The notes below the pieces were generated by a model, which saw only the letters and a list, made by a program, of their open reading frames with translations, had not been told where the DNA came from and made no database searches. This document shows positions 2,505-48,204 of a stretch of DNA of 64,000 nucleotides, piece after piece. The DNA lies in NCBI GenBank assembly GCA_047495785.1, contig JBLDXI010000021.1:186001-250000 (forward strand), in the 5' to 3' direction. Each line of letters starts with the position of its first letter. The stretch's first letter is position 1. This DNA comes from Lepidodermella squamata (lineage: Eukaryota > Animalia > Gastrotricha). The translations under genes and the position numbers were made by a program.

Positions 2505-4134
2505 CCGTAATCCAGTACAACTTTGAACAGGTACAAGTTTGAACTTTTCATGCAAATCAGCTTTTCTCTGAAACTATAGGGATCTACTACTTGGGAATTT
2601 TACTAAATACAGGTATCGTTCTGATCTAACATTTTGCCAAGTTTCATCAACGCAGCCCCTACGGTCTCTCCCTTGAAAATTTTCGAAAATGAAGTGTTGC
2701 CCTGTGATAACCGTAGCAGACATCCGCGCGGTCCAACTTGGCGAACTCAAGCTTATACTTCAAGGCACGCCCATCTATAGAGTGGTTTTCGCGGGGCATG
2801 CGCTCAAAGGGTAGCAAAGGGTTGCAAGGGTAGCCGGTACAACTTGGAACATCAGTACAACTTTGAACACGATAAATATGCATTATTTTTACTTTACGAT
2901 TGATGGAATTGAGCGCTATAGGCCTATAGGTATAGTTTCATACGTTTCGGTTATTTTCGGGTATAAATAAACTTATAGCGCTCAATTTCATCAATCATTT
3001 TTACTTTAAGGGGAACTTTTTGCAGACTTCGTTCGCATCTAGGATCGAACGTGCGTCACCGTGAAATATGATCATGATATCTCTAAAGCTTATCGTTTAT
3101 TTTTATTTAGTAAATTTATTTCCAGCTTTTGAATGGCGGGTGGCCTATAAACAAGGGTGTTTGCATTTTACCCAAAGTTTACTTAAAGTTCAACCGCTTA
3201 ACAAAAATTTAAAGTGGCTAGTGGCTATATTTACAATTATTACCATCGATGCGCACATCACCCGACTAGCAATCGAGATGCCTGTTGTTGCGATCAAGAC
3301 GGCATTTGCTGAAATCCAGCCAATGGGAGAGTTAAACTGCCGTTTTTCTCAAGTTTTCTGCGCGTTAACAAACGCTAGTAGAAAAGCGTCACATCAGCGT
3401 CACTTAGCTTCAAAAATCCCGCAGAAAATCCGGTACTGGTGATCGTTTTCCAGCCAAATCACCATCGAAAATTACAGTTTATAGTCACCAGTCACCAGTC
3501 ACCAAATCCTTAATCTGAGCTTTTGTTTCGATCCGAGTCCGTAGCCCGAGTGCGAAGCCAATTTCATCCAAGCTTTTGATGTTCGTGAGATCACAACATC
3601 GAAGCTTATCGGGGTAATTTCACTTTTGGAAGGTTCTGCTGAGGAACAAGCTTAGGAGGCTAATTCAATCTGCCTTGATCTCGCTATACGGGAGATGGTA
3701 AATAGCCTTGGTTTCGAAATTCGCTAACTTAATCCCTTCAGTCCAGATACGCCTCATCGGTGAAGACGTTTGTTCTTTCTACTTGACACCATCCAGTGAT
3801 GATTAAAATTTTAGACGCGGATTCGGCATTCAAGAAAACCAGTGAGATGTAAATCGCAAATTTCTATTAAATTAAATCACACAATTCTCTGCGCGCGCGC
3901 ATAAAGGTGGATTTTTAATTTAACGAAATCTTGGTGTTCAAAGTTGTACTTTGGGGTAGCCCCTGCCAAATCCTTACGCTTATGAATTTCGTAGAATAAA
4001 AAATATCAGGATGTTACGGAAGGCGGCCCCTATCGAACTGCGTTGAAAACCCGACCAAAATCGCATATGTTGAATTTAAACACCACAATGAAGTATGCGT
4101 GGACGTAAGTGTTCAAAGTTGTACCGGATTACGA
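2505..4134. mobile_element. Non-autonomous TIR DNA element (Tc1/mariner-pogo-like, CCGTA end)
   Basis: TA+CCGTAATCCAGTACAACTTTGAACA at the left end; its inverse TGTTCAAAGTTGTACCGGATTACG (1 mismatch in 24) at 4110-4133. Subterminal copies of GTACAACTTTGAACA at ~2531, 2836, 2855 and inverted at ~3934. No transposase seen. Confidence 0.7.
2897..2997. mobile_element. ~100-bp MITE nested in the larger TIR element
   Basis: 23-bp inverted repeat GATTGATGGAATTGAGCGCTATA / TATAGCGCTCAATTTCATCAATC (1 mismatch), flanked by the direct repeat TTTTTACTTTA (2886-2896, 2998-3008). Confidence 0.7.
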
Positions 4135-37628: not shown

Positions 37629-38686
37629 TTGGATTTCCGGTTCACTACTGTGCGAAATTTGATTCGGGATCTTTCCCAGCCACAATCGTGCATCGCGCAA
37701 ATTCTAAACTCGTGTGTGAACCTGCTGGAACCGATGGATCCTGCCACGGCCGCCCAATCAGAACTGCGAGCCCGTCGTGTCGCCGAAAAAACTGCTCAGC
37801 TGAAGCGACTTCGCGATACGTATTACAGTGCCCTCAACCGCGCAAAGTCAGTCGCGAAGCAAACTATTTTAACAGTTCATTTCGAGAAATTGATTGAACT
37901 GCACGAAATTCTACTGGGCTTCGATGAGCGGGTATTTAAATTTCTCATATTTTTTCGCTTTTATTTGTATTTTCGCTGATTGTCTAGCTTGGAGAGATGG
38001 AATCTGAATTCGCAAGAGAGCTTGGCTACGAGGTCTACAAAAGACCAGCTGGAACTACGGCCGTTTTTCTCGATTTTCTGCGTATCCACGACTCGGCTTG
38101 TCGAGGGCAGTCTCTGTTGTTGGAAAGGCTGTTGCTATCTCGCTGCTTTTCACCGATTGAAGAATTTTTCAATGGTATTGTCTATTCGAAAAGCTGGCAG
38201 TCGGTGATCGCTAACCACGTTGACTCGAGTGATTCGTTCAAAACGCCCCTAATCCAGGCCTGCGAGCACGGCAAATTCGATTGCGTCAAGATTTTGGTGG
38301 AGGCCGGGGCTAATTTGAAGGCGAGAGTGGCGGACGATCGCAAATCGACCGGGATACATCTGGCGGCGGAAAATGGTTACTTCTCGATTGTCAAGTACCT
38401 ACTAAGCAAGGATGGCAGTCTTGCGACCTTGGCCGATGGCAACGGACTGACTGCCGTGCAACGAGCTGCTGATGCTGGGCAAAGTGGGGTAGTTATCTCA
38501 TTTTTGCTCGAGCACCATCTGCAAGGGGCTTCAAGTATTAAGGCTGTAATTGAAGAGGGCCTCAAGATATACCGTCGCGCCTTGGAGAAGGACCAGGTCG
38601 AGGTGATTAAAGCGTTGGTCAAAACTTTCCCGAGTCTAGTCACCGAACTTGCGTCACCTAGTGCAAGTGAGAAACTGCTCGTCTGA
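37629..38686 (+). CDS. Ankyrin-repeat protein with helical N-terminus; exons 37629-37931 and 37988-38686, 5' exon not located
   Basis: TPLIQACEHGKFDCVKILVEAGANL, TGIHLAAENGYFSIVKYLL and TAVQRAADAG ankyrin repeats; 56-nt GT-AG intron in phase 0. Confidence 0.75.
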
Positions 38687-39035: not shown

Positions 39036-39921
39036 GTTTTATCCCGTGAATTTTTTAATTCCCCTTGTGCTTTTAAGGGCCCCTTATTCTATGCCCTTTT
39101 AAAAACCCTTATGCTTTTTTCTAGTTTTTTTAGCTCAAAATAGCTCGATTTCGCCCCTGGGAGCAGGGCTAAGTCTGACCACTGGAAAAATATATGAATT
39201 TTCTGTAATACAGTAGACGCTGTATAATCCGAAACCCGGGAGTGAGGAAAGCGTTATAGTCAGGGCAGTTTTAGGGCGACGGACAGAGTTTACGTTATAA
39301 AATTCGGCGCTTGTTGAGGTGGACAGCCGCTTAATGCGGACGCGTACTATAAATACGGCCAGTTTTCTAGCGACGGTCACACTGTTTGGGCATTTTAGGC
39401 CACCGCGGACATCCTCCAACTCCGCGTCTCCTAGTAGGTGCTAGATCTTGTCACGCATCTTCCTCTGCTTAGCCTCAAGTTGCAAATTATGCGTACTTAT
39501 GGAAACCACTTCAATCTAATTCAAGAGCGCGCTAATTAGACAAGCAAACAATACCTGCGAGTAAAAACGGGCGTAATCCTGTCCGCTAAGGCCATTAAGG
39601 TAGGGGCGCCTAGGGATATAGGGGATCTCCCAATGCGGACAAATTTCCCGCGACCGAATGTCCGGATTATACAGCTTCTACTGTAGTTGCAAAATTCGAA
39701 ATTCGAAAATGGTTCCGTAACTCATGGGACACGCCGTAGGTTTCCGATTTCCGGATTCCTCATGGGTGTTATAATTTCGACGTTTATTCCGAAAGACGAA
39801 CTTGCATTCCATTTTTCAATTTTATTTCAATGGCAAAAATACGCATCCAGAATAGTAATGAGTGTTCACAGGCTGAATAATTTTTCGAAAAAATGACCAT
39901 CTTCCATCTTCAAGTTCACCT

Positions 39922-42900
39922 TCATTCAATTGACTCGTGATTTTGCTCATCGTCATCTTCGGCTATTGACCAGAAAGCTTTTTTGCGTCGGAAAGCATAG
40001 CGCCGCCACGCTGTTTGAATTCGCGCGGCGCACATTTCTTCGCGTCTTCGCTCCATTGTCGACGAAATGCGAAGATTATTATTTCGAACTACAGTTGATT
40101 TCCAATCGCCAAACACGCTTTTTTCAAGCTCGGATGCGACGAAAGCTCGCTCCATCGTATCTTCAGTTAAATGAAGTTCAGCGTCTTCCAAAATAGATTT
40201 TCGCCGGGTTTTCCGCTCAGCTGCTAATAATCCGAGGGACCGATGGTAGACCAAAGCTAGCAACACATCGCCGCAATGCACCTGCTCCTCACCTGTCACG
40301 CCGTCGTGCAAAATCGGCACATCCAAAACCGCAATCACATGGTGATTTGGCTTCTGAAAAAAAAATAAAAAATAAATAAGGTGGAATTTTCATAAAAATA
40401 GTATTTACCGAGAAGTGGAATGGTGGATCGAGCCGATCGAGTAAATCGCTAAGCATGAACAGAGGAATGTACTGCGTAGCTAGCGCATCAAACGTGGCCC
40501 AGGTGACAAAAAATCGATCGATATCATCATCGATAATCGTCGTATCGCTTAACCTGGCTGAATTATCCTCCGATTCATTCGCTCGCTGTTCCGAAACTGA
40601 AGTAGCCGCCTCAAGATTCTCGAGAATAATTGCGACAAAAATGTTGGTCAGAACCAAATTCGAGACAATAATAAACGAGGCCAAATAAATTGCTGCAATA
40701 ATCGGGCTGCCGCAATCGCCGCCGATAGTTGGAACTTTTGACCCAGTAACCGGGTGAACGTAATAATTTGGGTCACAGCCGCCCCTTTCAACGTTTACAG
40801 GCTGTAGTGACATGGCGGTAAGAACTCCATCCCAACCCGCCATTGTACTGAGCCGGAAAAGCAGTAGGAAACTGTTGCCGAAAGTTTCGAAATTAACAAC
40901 ATCGCTTATAACACCCTGATGGCGAATGTGGCCGAATAGAATCATCCCGCAAATCGAATAAATAAAGATAATCAACGATAATAAGCATCCAACGTTGAAG
41001 AGAGCGGGTAGAGAACTGATCAGTGAGAAAATCAGCGTTCGAATTGTAGTCATCGATCGAACCAATCGAATGAGCCGGCCGATTCTTAGAACTCGTAATG
41101 CTCGCAATAGTGAGCTTGTTCGAAGGCTTTTAGTCACTGAACTTTCGTCGATAGCCATCATAACTAAGGACCAAATAACAAGGGTCAAATCGAAAACATT
41201 CCACGCCTCGCGGAAGTAATGAACTCTAAGTCCTATAATTTTGACCACAGCTTCGATGGTGAAAATTGCTGTGAACGCAATGTTGAGAATTTCTTGAATT
41301 TGAGTGAAAATTTCAGATTGATTAAAGTGTTCCGTCGCTAGGGTGACACAACTTGCAACAATAACAACAGCCATGATTATTTCAAAAAGCGGCGCCGTGG
41401 CTATTTTGAAGAAAATGTGAAGGTATTTCGCTTTCGGCTTCGGAACCAATCGACGCGGTTTGCGTTTTCCGACTTTTTTCACCATTCGATAGTAGGCCCG
41501 TTGCGTTTCTGTTAGCAAAAGTTCGACGGCTGAAACTTCGAGTTCTTTCTTCAACTCGTTGAAAGAATCGACAATAACGCCGATGAAAAGGTTCAGTAAG
41601 AAGAATGAACCGAAAATGATGAAAACTACGAAATAGAGGGCGAAGGAGAAGCTTTGTTCTCGGCTTGGTTGATCGTCAAGATTTTCGGGTACATCTACCC
41701 CAGCTTCCATAATGTCGGTCCAGCTTTCGAAGGTAGCAACTTGAAGCAGGGCTAAGTAACCACTGATTACGTTATCAAAGTTAATCGTAGGATTCGCCCA
41801 TCGCCGGGTAGCATTTGTGTTGTTCTGGAATGATTCGCATTCGCGTCGATTAGCTATCAATGCGATTGGTAATCTATTGCCAGTTTCGATATCGATACAA
41901 CGAGCAAATTTGCCGGCGAAAAACTGAACCCCGACAATGGAGAAAACAAGCCAGAAGACGATGACCACAAGTAATACGTTTCCAATGCCGGGTATTGTTC
42001 GAATCAAGGCGTCGACAACTATTTTCATACCTTCCCATCGAGAGATCTGAAAAAACGATTGAAATTTCGAACTTTCAAGGTTAAAATACTAACTGCTCGT
42101 AAAGGTCTCAAGCATCTTATGCAGCGCAAGCAGCGAAGAGCCAATAAATTGCTTGATTTTGTATTCGTGGCGTATGTCAAACCGATGTCGACAAATCCGG
42201 TCTAAAAATTCAGGTATAAATTCATTTTTTAGGAATGAATCATCGTACCAAAATGACGACAAAATCTAATATTGTCCAAAACTGGGTGAAACAAGCTTTG
42301 AACCCATATGCAAATAATTTCAGCAAGAACTCGGCTGTGAATAGGCCGAGAAAAACTTGATCGAGAATTGACAATGTGATTTCCAATCTTGACCCATCAA
42401 CCAGGTAAACATCATTCAGGCACTATTTCAAGCATAATAAGTAAATATTTTGATTTCTTTTTCAAAATTTTACTAGAAGAATTGAGCTGATCACAATCAG
42501 GGCCAAAACCACGCCTTCGAACGCCCGATGTTCGCAAATTGTTCGAGCGTATCGGCGAGCATTTGTTAAGGCGGATGTAACAACTGTTGTCCTAATCGAC
42601 TTCCTTCTGCCGCCGATTTCCTCAGTTATCGAACTATGCTTCCGTTCTAGTTTACCCTTTCTTCGTTTCGTAGGTCTACAGGCCTCAAAGAATTTTCGAA
42701 TTTTCGAAGATAATGGCTGCTCGTCGTCCGTTTTCGCTTCAACCTTCGAAGAAGAGGACTTTAGATCGTCCGAACTGAAGGCCATGAGCAGAAGGGCTAG
42801 GAACAAGTTCAGCACAACGAAGGTTCCAACAATCAGCGTGCCGAGAAAAACCGGCATGCATTTAGCCATTCCGTTCGCTCGGAAACATACAATCATCGGC

Positions 42901-45159
42901 TCAACAGCGTCGCGGCATAAAATTCGGAAAACGGTGAGAAGTGATCGCATTAAACCATCAAAATTCCAACGCGGCAGGCTTTCGCCGAAAATTTCGAGGG
43001 TATAGGTTCCATCGAATAGTTGCATCCCAATCAGGGCGAAAATGAAAACAATGACTGCCATTATGACGGTCAGGTTGGCGAGTGAAGTTACCGTGTGAAA
43101 AATTATTTCGAGTAGCAGTCTCATGGTTCGCCACGACTGGGCCAATTTCAATATTCGCAACTTTGAAAATTCTTATTTTTCGAAATTTTACAAAAATTAA
43201 AAAAAATTCCCACCAGTCGAAGCAATCGAATGGCTGTTGTGTTTAATGATGTTGAAGACTGTAGGCCGTAGGTCGCAACAGCATCGATAATGCTGCCAAT
43301 TACGACGAAAAAATCGAGTAGATTCCAGTGGTTTTTAAAGTAGTCCCGCCCCAAAGCAATAATTTTAAGCACAGCTTCCAACCCGAAAATAACAGCACAT
43401 ACCTAATCGGAAAATCACAATTTCAATCATTTTTCGAAGTTTCAAATGTACGTCATTTATGATGTCAGTTGCTGTAGAAAGGTATTCCGGCATTCCGTAG
43501 TGAATAACAGCCATCGCCAGAGTATTGACGATGATTACACCAGTAATGACAGCGTCAAAAATTGAACTTTCAACAACCTTGCGAATTTTCGCTCGATAAT
43601 TGTTTAGCTTCATCTTGAGCTGTTGCCATATTGAAATCGGCTTCTTAGACGAGGTGCTTCGCCTATTTGTAGGGCCGGGTCTCAACACGCTAACGCGAAG
43701 TTGATGAACGTTGTCAGCCCTGAAATTTCCAGAAGGTTGAGAACATTGGAAAATTACTACAACAATTACCCAAGATCTTCGATAATCCCAGAAGACTCTG
43801 AATCTCCATTTTCCTCGGGCAAGGTTTCCAAGCTATTTGATCGTTTTGATTCAGCCGCATCTTCAGTTTTATTTTCGGATGACTCATCAGGGGTATAGCT
43901 CAAAGCGACGACAGATAGAATTAGATTCATCAGGTAGAACGCGCCGAAAATGACGACAATAAAAAAGTAAAGGCTGCTCCAGGTGCCATTCGCAGATAGG
44001 ACCACGCGAAATTCCTCCTCCCAATAATCCCCAGTCATGACAATTATCACCGCTATTATAGCCATGAGAAAATCGTCAAAGCTAAGATAGCCGTACATCG
44101 GATTGCTTGAAGATGGCACTTGCTGGCAGGAATATCCACCTGGACATTTTCTATAACCAGAATTTTCGTTTGAGATTTGAATAAACTGAAAACATACTGA
44201 GCCCCGGTTAGATTTCCGCAAATCATGTAATTTCCTAGGTTGTCAAGTTTCCAATTCTCAGGTGTTGCAATCCATTGCGACCAACTTTGATTCAAACCCG
44301 GAGCCATTTTAGCCACACATTTATTCCTCAAATCGCCGGAAAATAACTCGATGCCAAATAGGGCGAAAACCATCAAGAAAAACGTTACAAAAGCCAACAC
44401 CCCCACCAGCTTTTTGATTGACAAAAGAAGGGCTTTGACGATGGCTTGAAGCCCTGGTAGAATTGTGACCATTCGAAGTAAACGGAAAGTTCGTAGTGAC
44501 TGCAAATTAAGATCGCCATTAACTGCCCCGCTCAGCTGAACTGCCAAAACAGCGTAGGACGACAGCAATACCGCAAAATCTAGCCAGTTCCAAGGGTCCG
44601 TGAGATATGTATGCGAATGAAACGCCAACCCTCTGGCTGTTACTTTCACCAGTGCTTCCAGGGTGTAAATTGCTAGAAACGTGTATTCAGCCACTGGGTT
44701 GTCTACGTTTATTGACATGTAAACCGCGTTGCTTAGAATTGTTAATAAAATCAGGCATTCGAACAACGGGTGCGTATAGGCGTAGAGGGCCAGTTTTCGG
44801 ACGACGTGGTCACTTCGAAATAGGTAGAACGAAGGTGCGTTCGCTAATCGATATAACTTGGCGTTATTAGATCCCAGTTCTCGCCCAACTACAACAAAAG
44901 TCTAAAAATTTTGCAATATATGCGAATGGTGTTCAGAAATAACAGGACGAACTGTTTCATTTTCTGGCTGAGGCATTCCATAGGAAGCAAAGGTCAAGCT
45001 CCGAATGAGGTCTTCTGGAACCTGTTGGCCCTCTTCAATCTTCGTCCAAGGCGATTCTTGAATTGTTTGACGTCTGGAACGCCGAGCTGACGGCCTAAAT
45101 GAAGGCCGCGGCTCCTGATCAATGACCGCAGTGGAAAATCTCACTTCTCTCTCAGCCAT
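39922..45159 (-). CDS. Four-domain voltage-gated sodium-channel-family alpha subunit, Nav2 (DSC1/NaCP60E)-like, ~9 short introns, roughly 1,600 aa
   Basis: Four 6-TM repeats with S4 Arg arrays; pore loops MTGDYWEE / LCRDAVEP / ATFESWTD / STMAGWDG; III-IV linker LLLTETQRAYY; C-terminal EF-hand-like region and IQ motif (ARIQTAWRRY). Glu in domain III is the Nav2 hallmark. Confidence 0.9.
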
Positions 45160-45223
45160 ATTTCAAACAATAATTTTCAAAGCCGCCATCGGTATTTTAC
45201 CCGGATTCTCATGAATTTTTAAC

Positions 45224-45545
45224 GTGGTATAGACCGAAGTCTAGCCAGCGTCTGGACAGCGTTTACCGTAAACAAAACATCGATTTGTGCATGACAACTG
45301 CCTTTTTATTGATTCGTTCTGACTAAAACAAACAATCCATCATTCATATTATATGCAACTTGCCGCCATCGCAACGCGTTTCAACGATAGGAATACACAA
45401 AAAACACGCGCCTGCAAAAAGAAAGCAAAATTTCAAGTAGCGTTTTTTACAACATTTTGCAAACACGAAAGAGAAAAAAACAGCGCATATGGACAATATA
45501 TACACGTGTTTCATCATCTCAATCTCAGATGATAGTGACGTCGCT
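45224..45545. repeat. Direct repeat pair 2, copy A (minus-strand AATAAA at 45310-45305), begins 3 bp after the stop of the 46487-45549 gene
   Basis: Near-identical to 47817-48204 apart from several short indels, mostly deletions. Confidence 0.95.
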
Positions 45546-47381: not shown

Positions 47382-47797
47382 CCGTAAAAAGGGGTGACTT
47401 TGCACAGTGGGGTGACATTAGCATACCAAAATGGGGTGACTTTGGCATATCAAAAATCGAAGGTGGAAAGATGAAGACCCCATGAGGGGGGTACCGTTGG
47501 ATAGCCCAAGAATAGGCCAGCCTGGATATGTAAAATGCTCATCAATGCAACCTATTTCGGGACAAAAAATTAGAGGTAAGTTTTTGATAAAATTGTCGAT
47601 ATTTTTTCGGTAGAATTTCCGTCGCTGCTCAACCGAATCCGCCTCATATACATTGAAATTATATACCATTTTCGGAGAACCCGTCTTTCAGGCTATCCAA
47701 CGGTACCCCACTCATGGGGTCTTTATCTTTCCACCTTCGATTTTTGATATGCCAAAGTCACCCCATTTTGGTATGCTAATGTCACCCCAATTTACGG
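47382..47797. mobile_element. Pogo/Tc1-mariner-like MITE with ~100-bp TIRs and TA target duplication
   Basis: TA-CCGTAAA..GGGGTGACATTAGCATACCAAAATGGGGTGACTTTGGCATATCAAAAATCGAAGGTGGAAAGAT.. mirrored at 47692-47797, ending TTTACGG-TA; internal GGGGTGAC repeats. Confidence 0.9.
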
Positions 47798-47816: not shown

Positions 47817-48204
47817 GTGGTGAAGACCGAAGTCGGGACAGCATTTACCGTAAACAAAACATCGATTTGTGCATGACAACTCGCTACTGCCTTTTTATTG
47901 ATTCGTTCACCTTCTTTCTCGCGTTTTGGCTATTATAAAAATAGTTGACTAAAACAAACAATCCATCATTCATATTATATGCAACTTGCCGCCGTCGCAG
48001 CGCGTTTCAACGATAGGAATACACAAAAAACACGCGCCTGCAAAAAGAAAGCAAAATTTCAAGTAGCGTTTTTTACAACATTTTGCAAACACGGCGACAG
48101 GCGAGCCGAAAGAGAAAACACAGCGTATAATATCGAAGACAGCGGATATGGACAATATATACACGTGTTTCATCATCTCAATCTCAGATGATAGTGACGT
48201 CGCT
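47817..48204. repeat. Direct repeat pair 2, copy B (probable distal 3' UTR/polyA region of STK11; minus-strand AATAAA at 47899-47894)
   Basis: Longer, less deleted copy of 45224-45545. Confidence 0.95.

What the first reader, a model, noticed from the sequence alone, without database searches (positions are those of the whole stretch)
42880..42930. Nav2-type channel with a D-D-E-A selectivity filter and remodelled domain II pore loop
Seen: the filter positions are D (MTGDYW, ~44028), D (LCRDAVEP, ~42910), E (ATFESW, ~41727) and A (STMAGW, ~40839). Known: Nav1 is DEKA, Nav2 is DEEA and some cnidarian channels are DKEA; domain II is normally LCGEWIE with a highly conserved Trp. Here G->R, E->D and W->A coincide. 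Inference: altered selectivity or conductance, or a non-conducting or sensor role.
Basis: partly seen in the sequence, partly recalled or inferred. Interest (0 to 1): 0.7.

Follow-up and report, generated by a model that had tools for sequence, protein, structure and literature searches.

The report
Sodium-channel relative with rewritten pore loop
An intact, selection-protected gene of a small unidentified invertebrate encodes a voltage-gated channel of the sodium-channel family whose ion-selecting ring reads D-D-E-A and whose second pore loop is rewritten (CRDAVEP instead of the near-universal CGEWIEP), a combination I found in no paper, but whose effect on ion flow is untested.

Summary
The minus strand (39922-45159) carries a 10-exon, 1595-codon gene with nine 47-55 nt GT-AG introns and one terminal stop. 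It encodes a four-domain channel of the Nav family with filter residues D345, D667, E1013 and A1309. Domain II reads LCRDAVEP where human Nav1.7 and 80 of 94 Nav-type database representatives read CGEW.

It is neither an error nor a decaying copy:
- A gene on two ENA metagenome contigs, 63-69% identical in protein and saturated at synonymous sites, keeps LCRDSVDP and D-D-E-A. R and D there use different codons.
- Of 40 listed differences to a second haplotype, 35 are synonymous.

The gene's sister group is a paralog family with LCRETYQP. This scan had already noted that family on other pieces of this genome. So Arg beside the filter and loss of both domain II tryptophans are older, and Glu-to-Asp is specific to this branch. 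Full-length trees put the group with protostome Nav2 (moderate support) and outside Nav1.

Most S4 charges, the outer acidic ring, the pore cysteines and a hydrophobic inactivation triad are kept. I therefore expect a conducting, voltage-gated cation channel with altered, probably weaker, calcium preference. That function is inferred only, and no RNA evidence was available.

The parts
39922..45159 (-). Whole coding region of the channel gene. It has 10 exons: 45159-44953, 44901-44198, 44150-43770, 43719-43452, 43402-43214, 43160-42474, 42422-42249, 42201-42094, 42046-40409 and 40353-39922. It codes for 1595 residues.
   Evidence: Exon junctions were chosen by frame, GT-AG ends and match to the near-intronless relative L001. 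There are nine introns of 47-55 nt and a single terminal stop. Pfam Ion_trans hits fall on the exons of all four domains.
42897..42920 (-). Domain II pore loop LCRDAVEP (residues 664-671): R666 at filter-1, D667 at the filter position, A668 in place of Trp, E670 in the outer ring.
   Evidence: The relative L001 reads LCRDSVDP, with synonymous codon changes at L, R, D, V and P.
42885..42896 (-). MIVC, in place of the canonical (L/M)WDC. The second domain II tryptophan and its neighbouring Asp are lost, and the Cys is kept.
   Evidence: L001 has MFQC and the sister paralog L002 has MFNC.
44027..44029 (-). Domain I filter Asp (D345) in MTGDYWEE, with Gly at filter-1 where Nav1 has Gln and Nav2 has Leu.
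41726..41728 (-). Domain III filter Glu (E1013) in ATFESW. There is no Lys.
40838..40840 (-). Domain IV filter Ala (A1309) in STMAGWDG.
44446..44499 (-). Domain I S4. It has three Arg only and is three residues shorter than in other Nav channels, so the fourth charge is missing.
   Evidence: The same deletion is present in L001.
43128..43234 (-). Domain II S4 (R, R, R, K plus R after QSW), interrupted by the 53-nt intron 43213-43161.
42094..42138 (-). Domain III S4, LRCLRCIRCLRPLRA. All five Arg are kept, and three Cys replace the usual Ala/Thr/Ala.
   Evidence: L001 has IRCLRCVRCLRPLRA, whereas the sister paralogs have LRALRTLRALRPLR.
41057..41107 (-). Domain IV S4, with its row of Arg intact.
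41513..41521 (-). Hydrophobic triad LLL in the III-IV linker, at the place of IFM (Nav1) or MFL (insect Nav2/CaV4).
   Evidence: L001 has VFL and L002 has LFM. The role of MFL in CaV4 is described in PMC10983803.
39979..40029 (-). C-terminal IQ-like motif.
   Evidence: Pfam IQ_SCN5A_C, E 6e-5, below the gathering score.

Best explanation
This is a working gene for a four-domain voltage-gated cation channel. It belongs to a lineage-specific offshoot of the Nav2 (DSC1 / 'sodium channel 60E' / CaV4) branch.

In the ancestor of that offshoot the domain II pore module was rebuilt. Gly before the filter residue became Arg, and both domain II tryptophans were lost. After a duplication, the branch leading to this gene also shortened the filter Glu to Asp, giving D-D-E-A, while keeping an acidic residue three places on (E or D).

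Shown here: the gene is intact, old and under purifying selection, and the odd residues themselves are conserved.

Inferred: the protein still opens with voltage and conducts. Its filter has a shorter carboxylate and a neighbouring guanidinium in domain II, so it should bind Ca2+ less tightly than a DEEA filter and let relatively more monovalent cations through.
For: - **Intact model:** 10 exons, 1595 codons, nine 47-55 nt GT-AG introns. The introns are too short to hide an alternative canonical exon.
- **Family:** the best solved-structure matches are Nav1 channels, ahead of Cav and NALCN. The best named database hits are Nav2 / 'sodium channel protein 60E' at about 46% identity.
- **Conservation:** contigs L001 and L005, from two ENA samples, carry a relative with LCRDSVDP and D-D-E-A. 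Between the two genes pS is 0.79 (saturated) against pN 0.27 over 1385 codons. Five of the eight motif codons differ only synonymously.
- **Second haplotype:** contigs of DNA run X1 cover the gene. Of the 40 listed differences, 35 are synonymous and 36 fall in third codon positions.
- **Sister family:** L002 and two tandem genes on L003/L004 read LCRETYQPM, with D-E-E-A or D-E-E-S. The trio is monophyletic at 98-100 SH-aLRT.
- **Working parts kept:** S4 Arg rows in DII-DIV, outer-ring acidic residues in all four domains, three domain II pore Cys, a hydrophobic III-IV triad and an IQ-like motif.
- **Baseline function of DEEA channels:** permeable to Ca2+ and Ba2+, with Na+ permeability varying by species (PMC10983803; PMC6259924).
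Against: - No current has been measured and no structure inspected. The direction of the selectivity change is my inference from general knowledge of E-to-D and charge changes in Cav/Nav filters.
- No RNA run was available, so expression is unproven.
- The listing of differences in the X1 contigs was truncated before the domain II loop. Base-level confirmation of the loop in that run is therefore missing.
- With the Trp gone the loop may fold differently, so E670 rather than D667 could face the pore.
- DI S4 has lost a charge and the triad lacks Phe in this gene, so gating may be unusual.
- Placement relative to Nav1 and bilaterian Nav2 is only moderately supported.
Confidence: 0.6

Rival explanations
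1. The domain II Arg acts as a built-in positive charge at the filter, like the Lys of DKEA or DEKA channels. The channel would then be sodium-selective, an independent route to Na+ selectivity.
For: The positive charge lies in the same pore loop as the Lys of cnidarian DKEA channels, one residue earlier. The Arg is strictly conserved in all five relatives examined. Unrelated diplonemid four-domain channels pair the same Arg-Asp (LTRDDW) in domain II.
Against: In solved Nav structures the residue before the filter residue contributes its backbone to the pore and its side chain points away from the pore; this is my own knowledge and was not tested here. The sister paralogs have the Arg with an unchanged Glu. 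No structure or current is available.
Confidence: 0.15
2. The protein no longer conducts in a voltage-gated way. It would serve as a sensor, a leak channel or a scaffold, as mammalian Nax does.
For: The pore loop lacks both domain II tryptophans. DI S4 is three residues shorter with only three charges. The inactivation triad is LLL, without Phe. The stem branch is long, 0.72-0.91 changes per column.
Against: The Arg rows of S4 in DII, DIII and DIV are complete. The outer acidic ring and pore cysteines are kept, and the filter keeps three acidic residues. Strong purifying selection acts on the pore loop itself.
Confidence: 0.15
3. It is a decaying or relaxed paralog on its way to becoming a pseudogene.
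For: The pore sequence is unusual and the branch is long.
Against: The reading frame is open across ten exons. Synonymous sites are saturated but protein identity is 63-69%. The odd residues are conserved with synonymous codon changes. Of 40 listed haplotype differences, 35 are synonymous.
Confidence: 0.03
4. It is an assembly or sequencing error, or a misalignment that puts the wrong residue at the filter.
For: None was found.
Against: The same Arg-Asp occurs in independent assemblies from two ENA samples. Independent contigs of run X1 cover the exon. The alignment between the conserved Cys anchors is gapless.
Confidence: 0.02

Closest known systems
Insect Nav2 channels: DSC1 (Drosophila 'sodium channel protein 60E'), BSC1 (cockroach), honeybee CaV4
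   Same: All share the four-domain Nav-type architecture, have no Lys in the filter, have Glu in DIII and Ala in DIV, carry a hydrophobic III-IV triad, and end the domain II loop in EP. They are the best named sequence matches at about 46% identity, and a full-length tree groups the gene with protostome Nav2.
   Different: Those channels read D-E-E-A with LCGEWIEPLWDC. This gene reads D-D-E-A with LCRDAVEPMIVC. Its DIV loop is AGWDG (Nav1-like) rather than AGWND. Its DI S4 is shorter, and its DIII S4 carries three Cys.
LCRETYQP paralog family
   Same: It is the sister group (98-100 support). It shares the Arg at filter-1 and the loss of both domain II tryptophans.
   Different: It keeps the filter Glu (D-E-E-A or D-E-E-S) and has Gln instead of an acidic residue at filter+3. 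It has a canonical DIII S4 without cysteines.
Cnidarian Nav2.5-type channels (D-K-E-A)
   Same: They are Nav2-grade channels with a positive charge in the domain II pore loop (PMC3809514, PMC6259924; representative P0214).
   Different: Their charge is a Lys at the filter position itself, with Gly and Trp kept (LCGKWIEP). Here it is an Arg one residue earlier, next to an Asp, without the Trp.
Amphioxus 'sodium channel protein 1 brain-like' (P0145 cluster, three Branchiostoma species)
   Same: It is the only other Nav-type representative with Asp at the domain II filter position (LCGDWVKPL).
   Different: It keeps Gly and Trp, has Gln in DIII (D-D-Q-A), and lies elsewhere in the tree.
Diplonemid / prokinetoplastid four-domain channels (E-D-E-E, LTRDDWVEPMW)
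   Same: They have the same Arg-Asp pair at filter-1 and the filter position of domain II.
   Different: They are Cav-like protist channels that keep the Trp and have an extra Asp at filter+1. They are unrelated to this gene within the superfamily (they scored as distant hits).
Mammalian Nax (SCN7A)
   Same: It is a Nav-family member with a non-canonical filter, and it served here as the model for the sensor rival.
   Different: Nax is a weak match. Here the S4 charges of DII-DIV are intact.

Membership tests
[quoted passage not shown] | Four homologous repeats, each with S1-S6, a charged S4 and a pore loop | tested here: met
   Pfam Ion_trans falls on the exons of all four domains. Alignments to solved Nav structures cover DI pore, DII S4-S6 and DIII S5-DIV S6. 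S4 and P-loop blocks were inspected.
Nav branch (Nav1 + Nav2) as opposed to Cav or NALCN | Closer in sequence to Nav than to Cav or NALCN | tested here: met
   For exon 9, Nav1 structures score 510-558 bits, Cav 336-376 and NALCN about 160. Trees root the gene inside the Nav group (100 support).
Nav2 (DSC1/BSC1/60E/CaV4) | Phylogenetic position with Nav2 and outside Nav1 | tested here: inconclusive
   The full-length tree puts the gene with protostome Nav2 (SH-aLRT 85) and outside the DEKA clade (100). On exon 9 alone, constrained trees with either Nav2 or Nav1 fit equally well (lnL +11.9 and +10.9 over the free quick tree; p-AU 0.77 and 0.73).
Nav2 (DSC1/BSC1/60E/CaV4) | No Lys at the filter in DII or DIII; Glu in DIII; a small residue in DIV | tested here: met
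   E1013 and A1309 are present and no Lys is found.
Nav2 (DSC1/BSC1/60E/CaV4) | Glu at the domain II filter position (reviews list only DEEA, DEES, DEEG and DEET) | tested here: not met
   D667. The review list is in PMC6259924.
Nav2 (DSC1/BSC1/60E/CaV4) | Canonical domain II loop CGEWIEP followed by LWDC | tested here: not met
   The loop reads CRDAVEP followed by MIVC. Loop length and the three Cys are kept.
Nav2 (DSC1/BSC1/60E/CaV4) | Voltage-gated current carried by Ca2+/Ba2+ with variable Na+ permeability | not testable with these tools
   This needs electrophysiology.
Nav1 (para / SCN) | Lys at the filter in DIII (DEKA) or DII (DKEA) | tested here: not met
   DII has D and DIII has E.
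Arg-loop Nav2 offshoot (LCRETYQP family) | Arg at filter-1 of DII, both DII Trp lost, and monophyly with that family | tested here: met
   Searches show the residues; searches show monophyly (98-100).
Nax-like non-gated sensors | Degenerate S4 charge rows | tested here: not met
   The Arg rows of DII, DIII and DIV S4 are complete. Only DI is reduced, to three charges.

The most novel reading that the evidence does not exclude
The conserved Arg-Asp pair in the domain II pore loop is a new way of tuning a four-domain channel's filter. The Arg would supply a fixed positive charge, a stand-in for the Lys of DEKA/DKEA channels, and the shortened Asp would make room for it. That would give a Nav2-derived channel that prefers sodium, an independent origin of Na+ selectivity in a small invertebrate. 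The same pair arose convergently in diplonemid protists.
Probability: 0.15. Interest if true: 0.85.

Novelty: new variant of a known kind. Interest (0 to 1): 0.55.

Why it matters
Reviews treat the first two filter residues, D-E, and the domain II loop CGEWIEP as constants of all Nav1 and Nav2 channels, and list only fourth-position variants of DEEA (PMC6259924). Here an old, selection-maintained gene breaks both rules at once, and its sister family breaks one of them. That gives a natural experiment on three questions: what the domain II Glu, Gly and Trp contribute to selectivity and filter stability; whether an Arg beside the filter can stand in for the selectivity Lys; and how channel repertoires diversify in poorly studied micro-invertebrates. 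All three are directly testable by expression and reversion mutants.

Tried and rejected
- **RNA evidence:** the run search returned three runs of unrecorded type (kind '?'), none on record as RNA. The laid contigs showed no splice joints, so expression could not be tested.
- **More members of the D-D-E-A branch:** a JGI metagenome scan found only canonical LCGEWIEPL genes. A word search with the domain II exon found nothing above 49% identity. A word search with P0121 found only itself as a close match.
- **Literature:** there is no paper with 'DDEA' or 'DDKA' plus sodium channel, and none on gastrotrich voltage-gated sodium channels. A 277-sequence survey of four-domain channels does not mention this filter.
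- **Exon 9 phylogeny:** the quick free search was worse than both constrained trees, so I do not rely on its backbone.
- **A claim withdrawn:** I first read the diplonemid loops as LTRDDVEPM, without Trp. Inspection showed LTRDDWVEPMW, so only the Arg-Asp pair is convergent, not the Trp loss.
- **dN/dS:** it could not be given as a number because synonymous sites are saturated.
- **Structure prediction:** not run. The tools return no coordinates, so side-chain orientation could not be read. The joined model was not sent to any tool.
- **Organism:** not identified here.
Full report
**Observation**

The minus strand at 42920-42897 reads TTA TGC CGC GAC GCT GTT GAG CCG, which translates to LCRDAVEP.
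- MTGDYW, with D at 44029-44027.
- ATFESW, with E at 41728-41726.
- STMAGW, with A at 40840-40838.

HMMER alignment of the exon to human Nav1.7 pairs LCRDAVEPMIVC with LCGEWIETMWDC without a gap, between conserved cysteines. A MAFFT alignment with ten Nav1 and Nav2 proteins gives the same register. So the changes G>R, E>D and W>A are real, and the filter reads D-D-E-A.

**Gene model**

I used a near-intronless relative (L001) as a guide. Each junction was chosen by reading frame and GT-AG ends, and the region resolves into ten exons:
- 45159-44953
- 44901-44198
- 44150-43770
- 43719-43452
- 43402-43214
- 43160-42474
- 42422-42249
- 42201-42094
- 42046-40409
- 40353-39922

The nine introns are 47-55 nt long. 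The model has 1595 codons and one stop, at the end. Introns this short leave no room for an alternative canonical domain II exon.

The spliced protein was joined only inside local scripts, to check the frame and to build a local alignment and tree. Every database search, family scan and structure-sequence search was run exon by exon, by reference. No search or fold was run on the joined model.

**What family it belongs to**

Pfam finds Ion_trans on the exons of all four domains, plus a weak SCN5A-type IQ motif. Against solved structures, exon 9 scores 510-558 bits with Nav1 channels, 444 with cockroach NavPaS, 336-376 with Cav channels and about 160 with NALCN. The best named database proteins are 'sodium channel protein 60E' (Nav2/DSC1) of arthropods and molluscs, at about 46% identity.

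The trees give a partly resolved picture:
- The tree of exon 9 put the gene in an unresolved Nav2 grade, outside the Nav1 clade.
- That quick search was poor. Constraining the gene's clade with bilaterian Nav2, or with Nav1, each gave a higher likelihood (+11.9 and +10.9; p-AU 0.77 and 0.73). Exon 9 alone therefore cannot decide.
- A full-length tree (36 rows, 1509 columns) puts the clade with protostome Nav2 at SH-aLRT 85, inside a bilaterian group at 100, and outside the DEKA clade at 100.

I file the gene as Nav2-derived with moderate confidence. Its DI, DIII and DIV loops (MT.DYWE...W.D, AGWDG) look more like Nav1 than like Nav2.

**How rare the loop is**

I ran an exhaustive HMMER search of 1.84 billion representatives with the domain II exon, and mapped the loops of the best 150 hits. 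Among the 94 Nav-type loops:
- 80 read GEW at the three positions.
- 84 have G, 89 have E and 91 have W.
- Only one other has Arg. That is P0121, this gene's own relative.
- Only one other has Asp at the filter position: an amphioxus protein with LCGDWVKPL and D-D-Q-A, present in three Branchiostoma species.

The review PMC6259924 lists DEEA, DEES, DEEG and DEET as the Nav2 filters, and calls the 'DE' of the first two positions omnipresent. Full-text searches for DDEA or DDKA with sodium channel found nothing.

**It is not an error and not decaying**

- Two ENA metagenome contigs from different samples (L001, L005) carry a gene 63-69% identical in protein. It has VTGDWW, LCRDSVDP, ATFESW and TTLAGW, which again gives D-D-E-A.
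- Over 1385 aligned codons, the proportion of synonymous differences is 0.79 (saturated) against 0.27 for non-synonymous differences.
- Within the eight-codon motif, L, R, D, V and P are encoded by different codons in the two genes. The only replacements are A/S and E/D.
- Contigs of DNA run X1 cover the whole gene and include a second haplotype. Of the 40 differences the tool listed, 35 are synonymous and 36 lie in third codon positions.
- That list was cut before the domain II loop, so the loop itself is not confirmed base by base in X1.

**Where the loop came from**

The nearest other relatives are P0023 on contig L002 and two tandem genes on L003/L004, from the same metagenome project. They read LCRETYQPM in domain II, with D-E-E-A or D-E-E-S. 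They form the sister group of the window gene plus L001 (98-100 support).

Earlier notes of this scan describe the same LCRETYQP family on other pieces of this genome. I could confirm it only on the metagenome relatives.

Parsimony then gives this order of events. Arg at filter-1 and loss of both domain II tryptophans (xWDC became MIVC, MFQC or MFNC) arose first. Glu>Asp came later, on the long stem (0.72-0.91 changes per column) of the window clade. That clade kept an acidic residue at filter+3 (E or D) where the sister family has Gln.

The window clade has two further private and conserved features:
- A three-residue deletion in DI S4 that removes the fourth charge.
- Three cysteines between the arginines of DIII S4 (RCLRC[IV]RCLRPLR).

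**What is kept**

The following canonical features are retained:
- Complete Arg rows in the S4 of DII, DIII and DIV.
- Outer-ring acidic residues in all four loops.
- The three pore cysteines of domain II.
- A hydrophobic triad at the inactivation site: LLL here, VFL in L001, LFM in L002.
- An IQ-like motif.

In honeybee CaV4 the corresponding MFL triad is needed for inactivation. DEEA channels carry Ca2+ and Ba2+, with Na+ permeability that varies by species (PMC10983803).

**Mechanism (inferred)**

I expect a voltage-gated, conducting cation channel. Its filter keeps three carboxylates, but one is shorter and sits next to a guanidinium. From general knowledge of Glu-to-Asp and charge substitutions in Cav and Nav filters (my own knowledge, not tested here), this should weaken divalent binding and raise the relative monovalent flux.

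There are two main alternatives:
- The Arg reaches the filter and acts like the selectivity Lys. This is the novel case.
- The channel has become a sensor or leak channel.

One outside observation shows that Arg beside the domain II filter residue is compatible with conserved channels. Diplonemid and prokinetoplastid E-D-E-E channels read LTRDDW, so they have the same Arg-Asp pair, with the Trp kept.

**Verdict**

This is a new variant of a known kind: an old, constrained Nav2-derived channel with an undescribed D-D-E-A filter and a rebuilt domain II pore. Its function is untested, expression is unproven, and the organism was not identified here. Earlier scan notes suggest a gastrotrich.

Noticed in passing
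window 42094-42138 (-); L001 about 2841-2885 (+): The domain III S4 carries three cysteines interleaved with the gating arginines (LRCLRCIRCLRPLR). They are conserved in the L001 relative (IRCLRCVRCLRPLR) but absent from the LCRETYQP sister paralogs and from other Nav channels. This could be a redox- or metal-sensitive voltage sensor.
   Followed up: partly
window 44446-44499 (-): The domain I S4 is three residues shorter than in all compared Nav channels and lacks the fourth positive charge. The L001 relative has the same deletion.
   Followed up: partly
P0170, P0189, P0225, P0226, P0233, P0239 (database proteins): Four-domain E-D-E-E channels of diplonemids and a prokinetoplastid (Namystynia, Sulcionema, Lacrimia, Hemistasia, Apiculatamorpha) read LTRDDWVEPMW in domain II. 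This is the same Arg-Asp pair as in the window gene, arising in an unrelated branch of the superfamily.
   Followed up: partly
P0145 cluster (Branchiostoma lanceolatum, B. floridae, B. belcheri): An annotated amphioxus 'sodium channel protein 1 brain-like' has LCGDWVKPL and ATFQGW, which gives a D-D-Q-A filter. I found no paper discussing it.
   Followed up: partly
L003 2723-7817 and 10001-14010 (same on L004): Two tandem LCRETYQP-type channel genes lie on one metagenome contig, one with D-E-E-A and one with D-E-E-S. This mirrors the cluster that earlier scan notes describe in this genome.
   Followed up: partly
window 45250-45545 and 47832-48204 (+): There are direct repeats of about 300 nt (96-99% identical, in three blocks) 2.6 kb apart. 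The first starts about 90 nt upstream of the channel's start codon. A 99-nt inverted repeat (47408-47506 / 47691-47789) lies between them. This may be a mobile element or a local duplication.
   Followed up: partly
window 37997-38686 (+): An ORF of 229 residues with ankyrin-repeat-like sequence lies just downstream of the channel gene, on the opposite strand.
   Followed up: no
window 39900-45200, runs X1 and X2: Run X1 holds a second haplotype or strain, 90-99% identical across the gene. Run X2, from another study, holds low-depth contigs over 43760-44536 only.
   Followed up: partly
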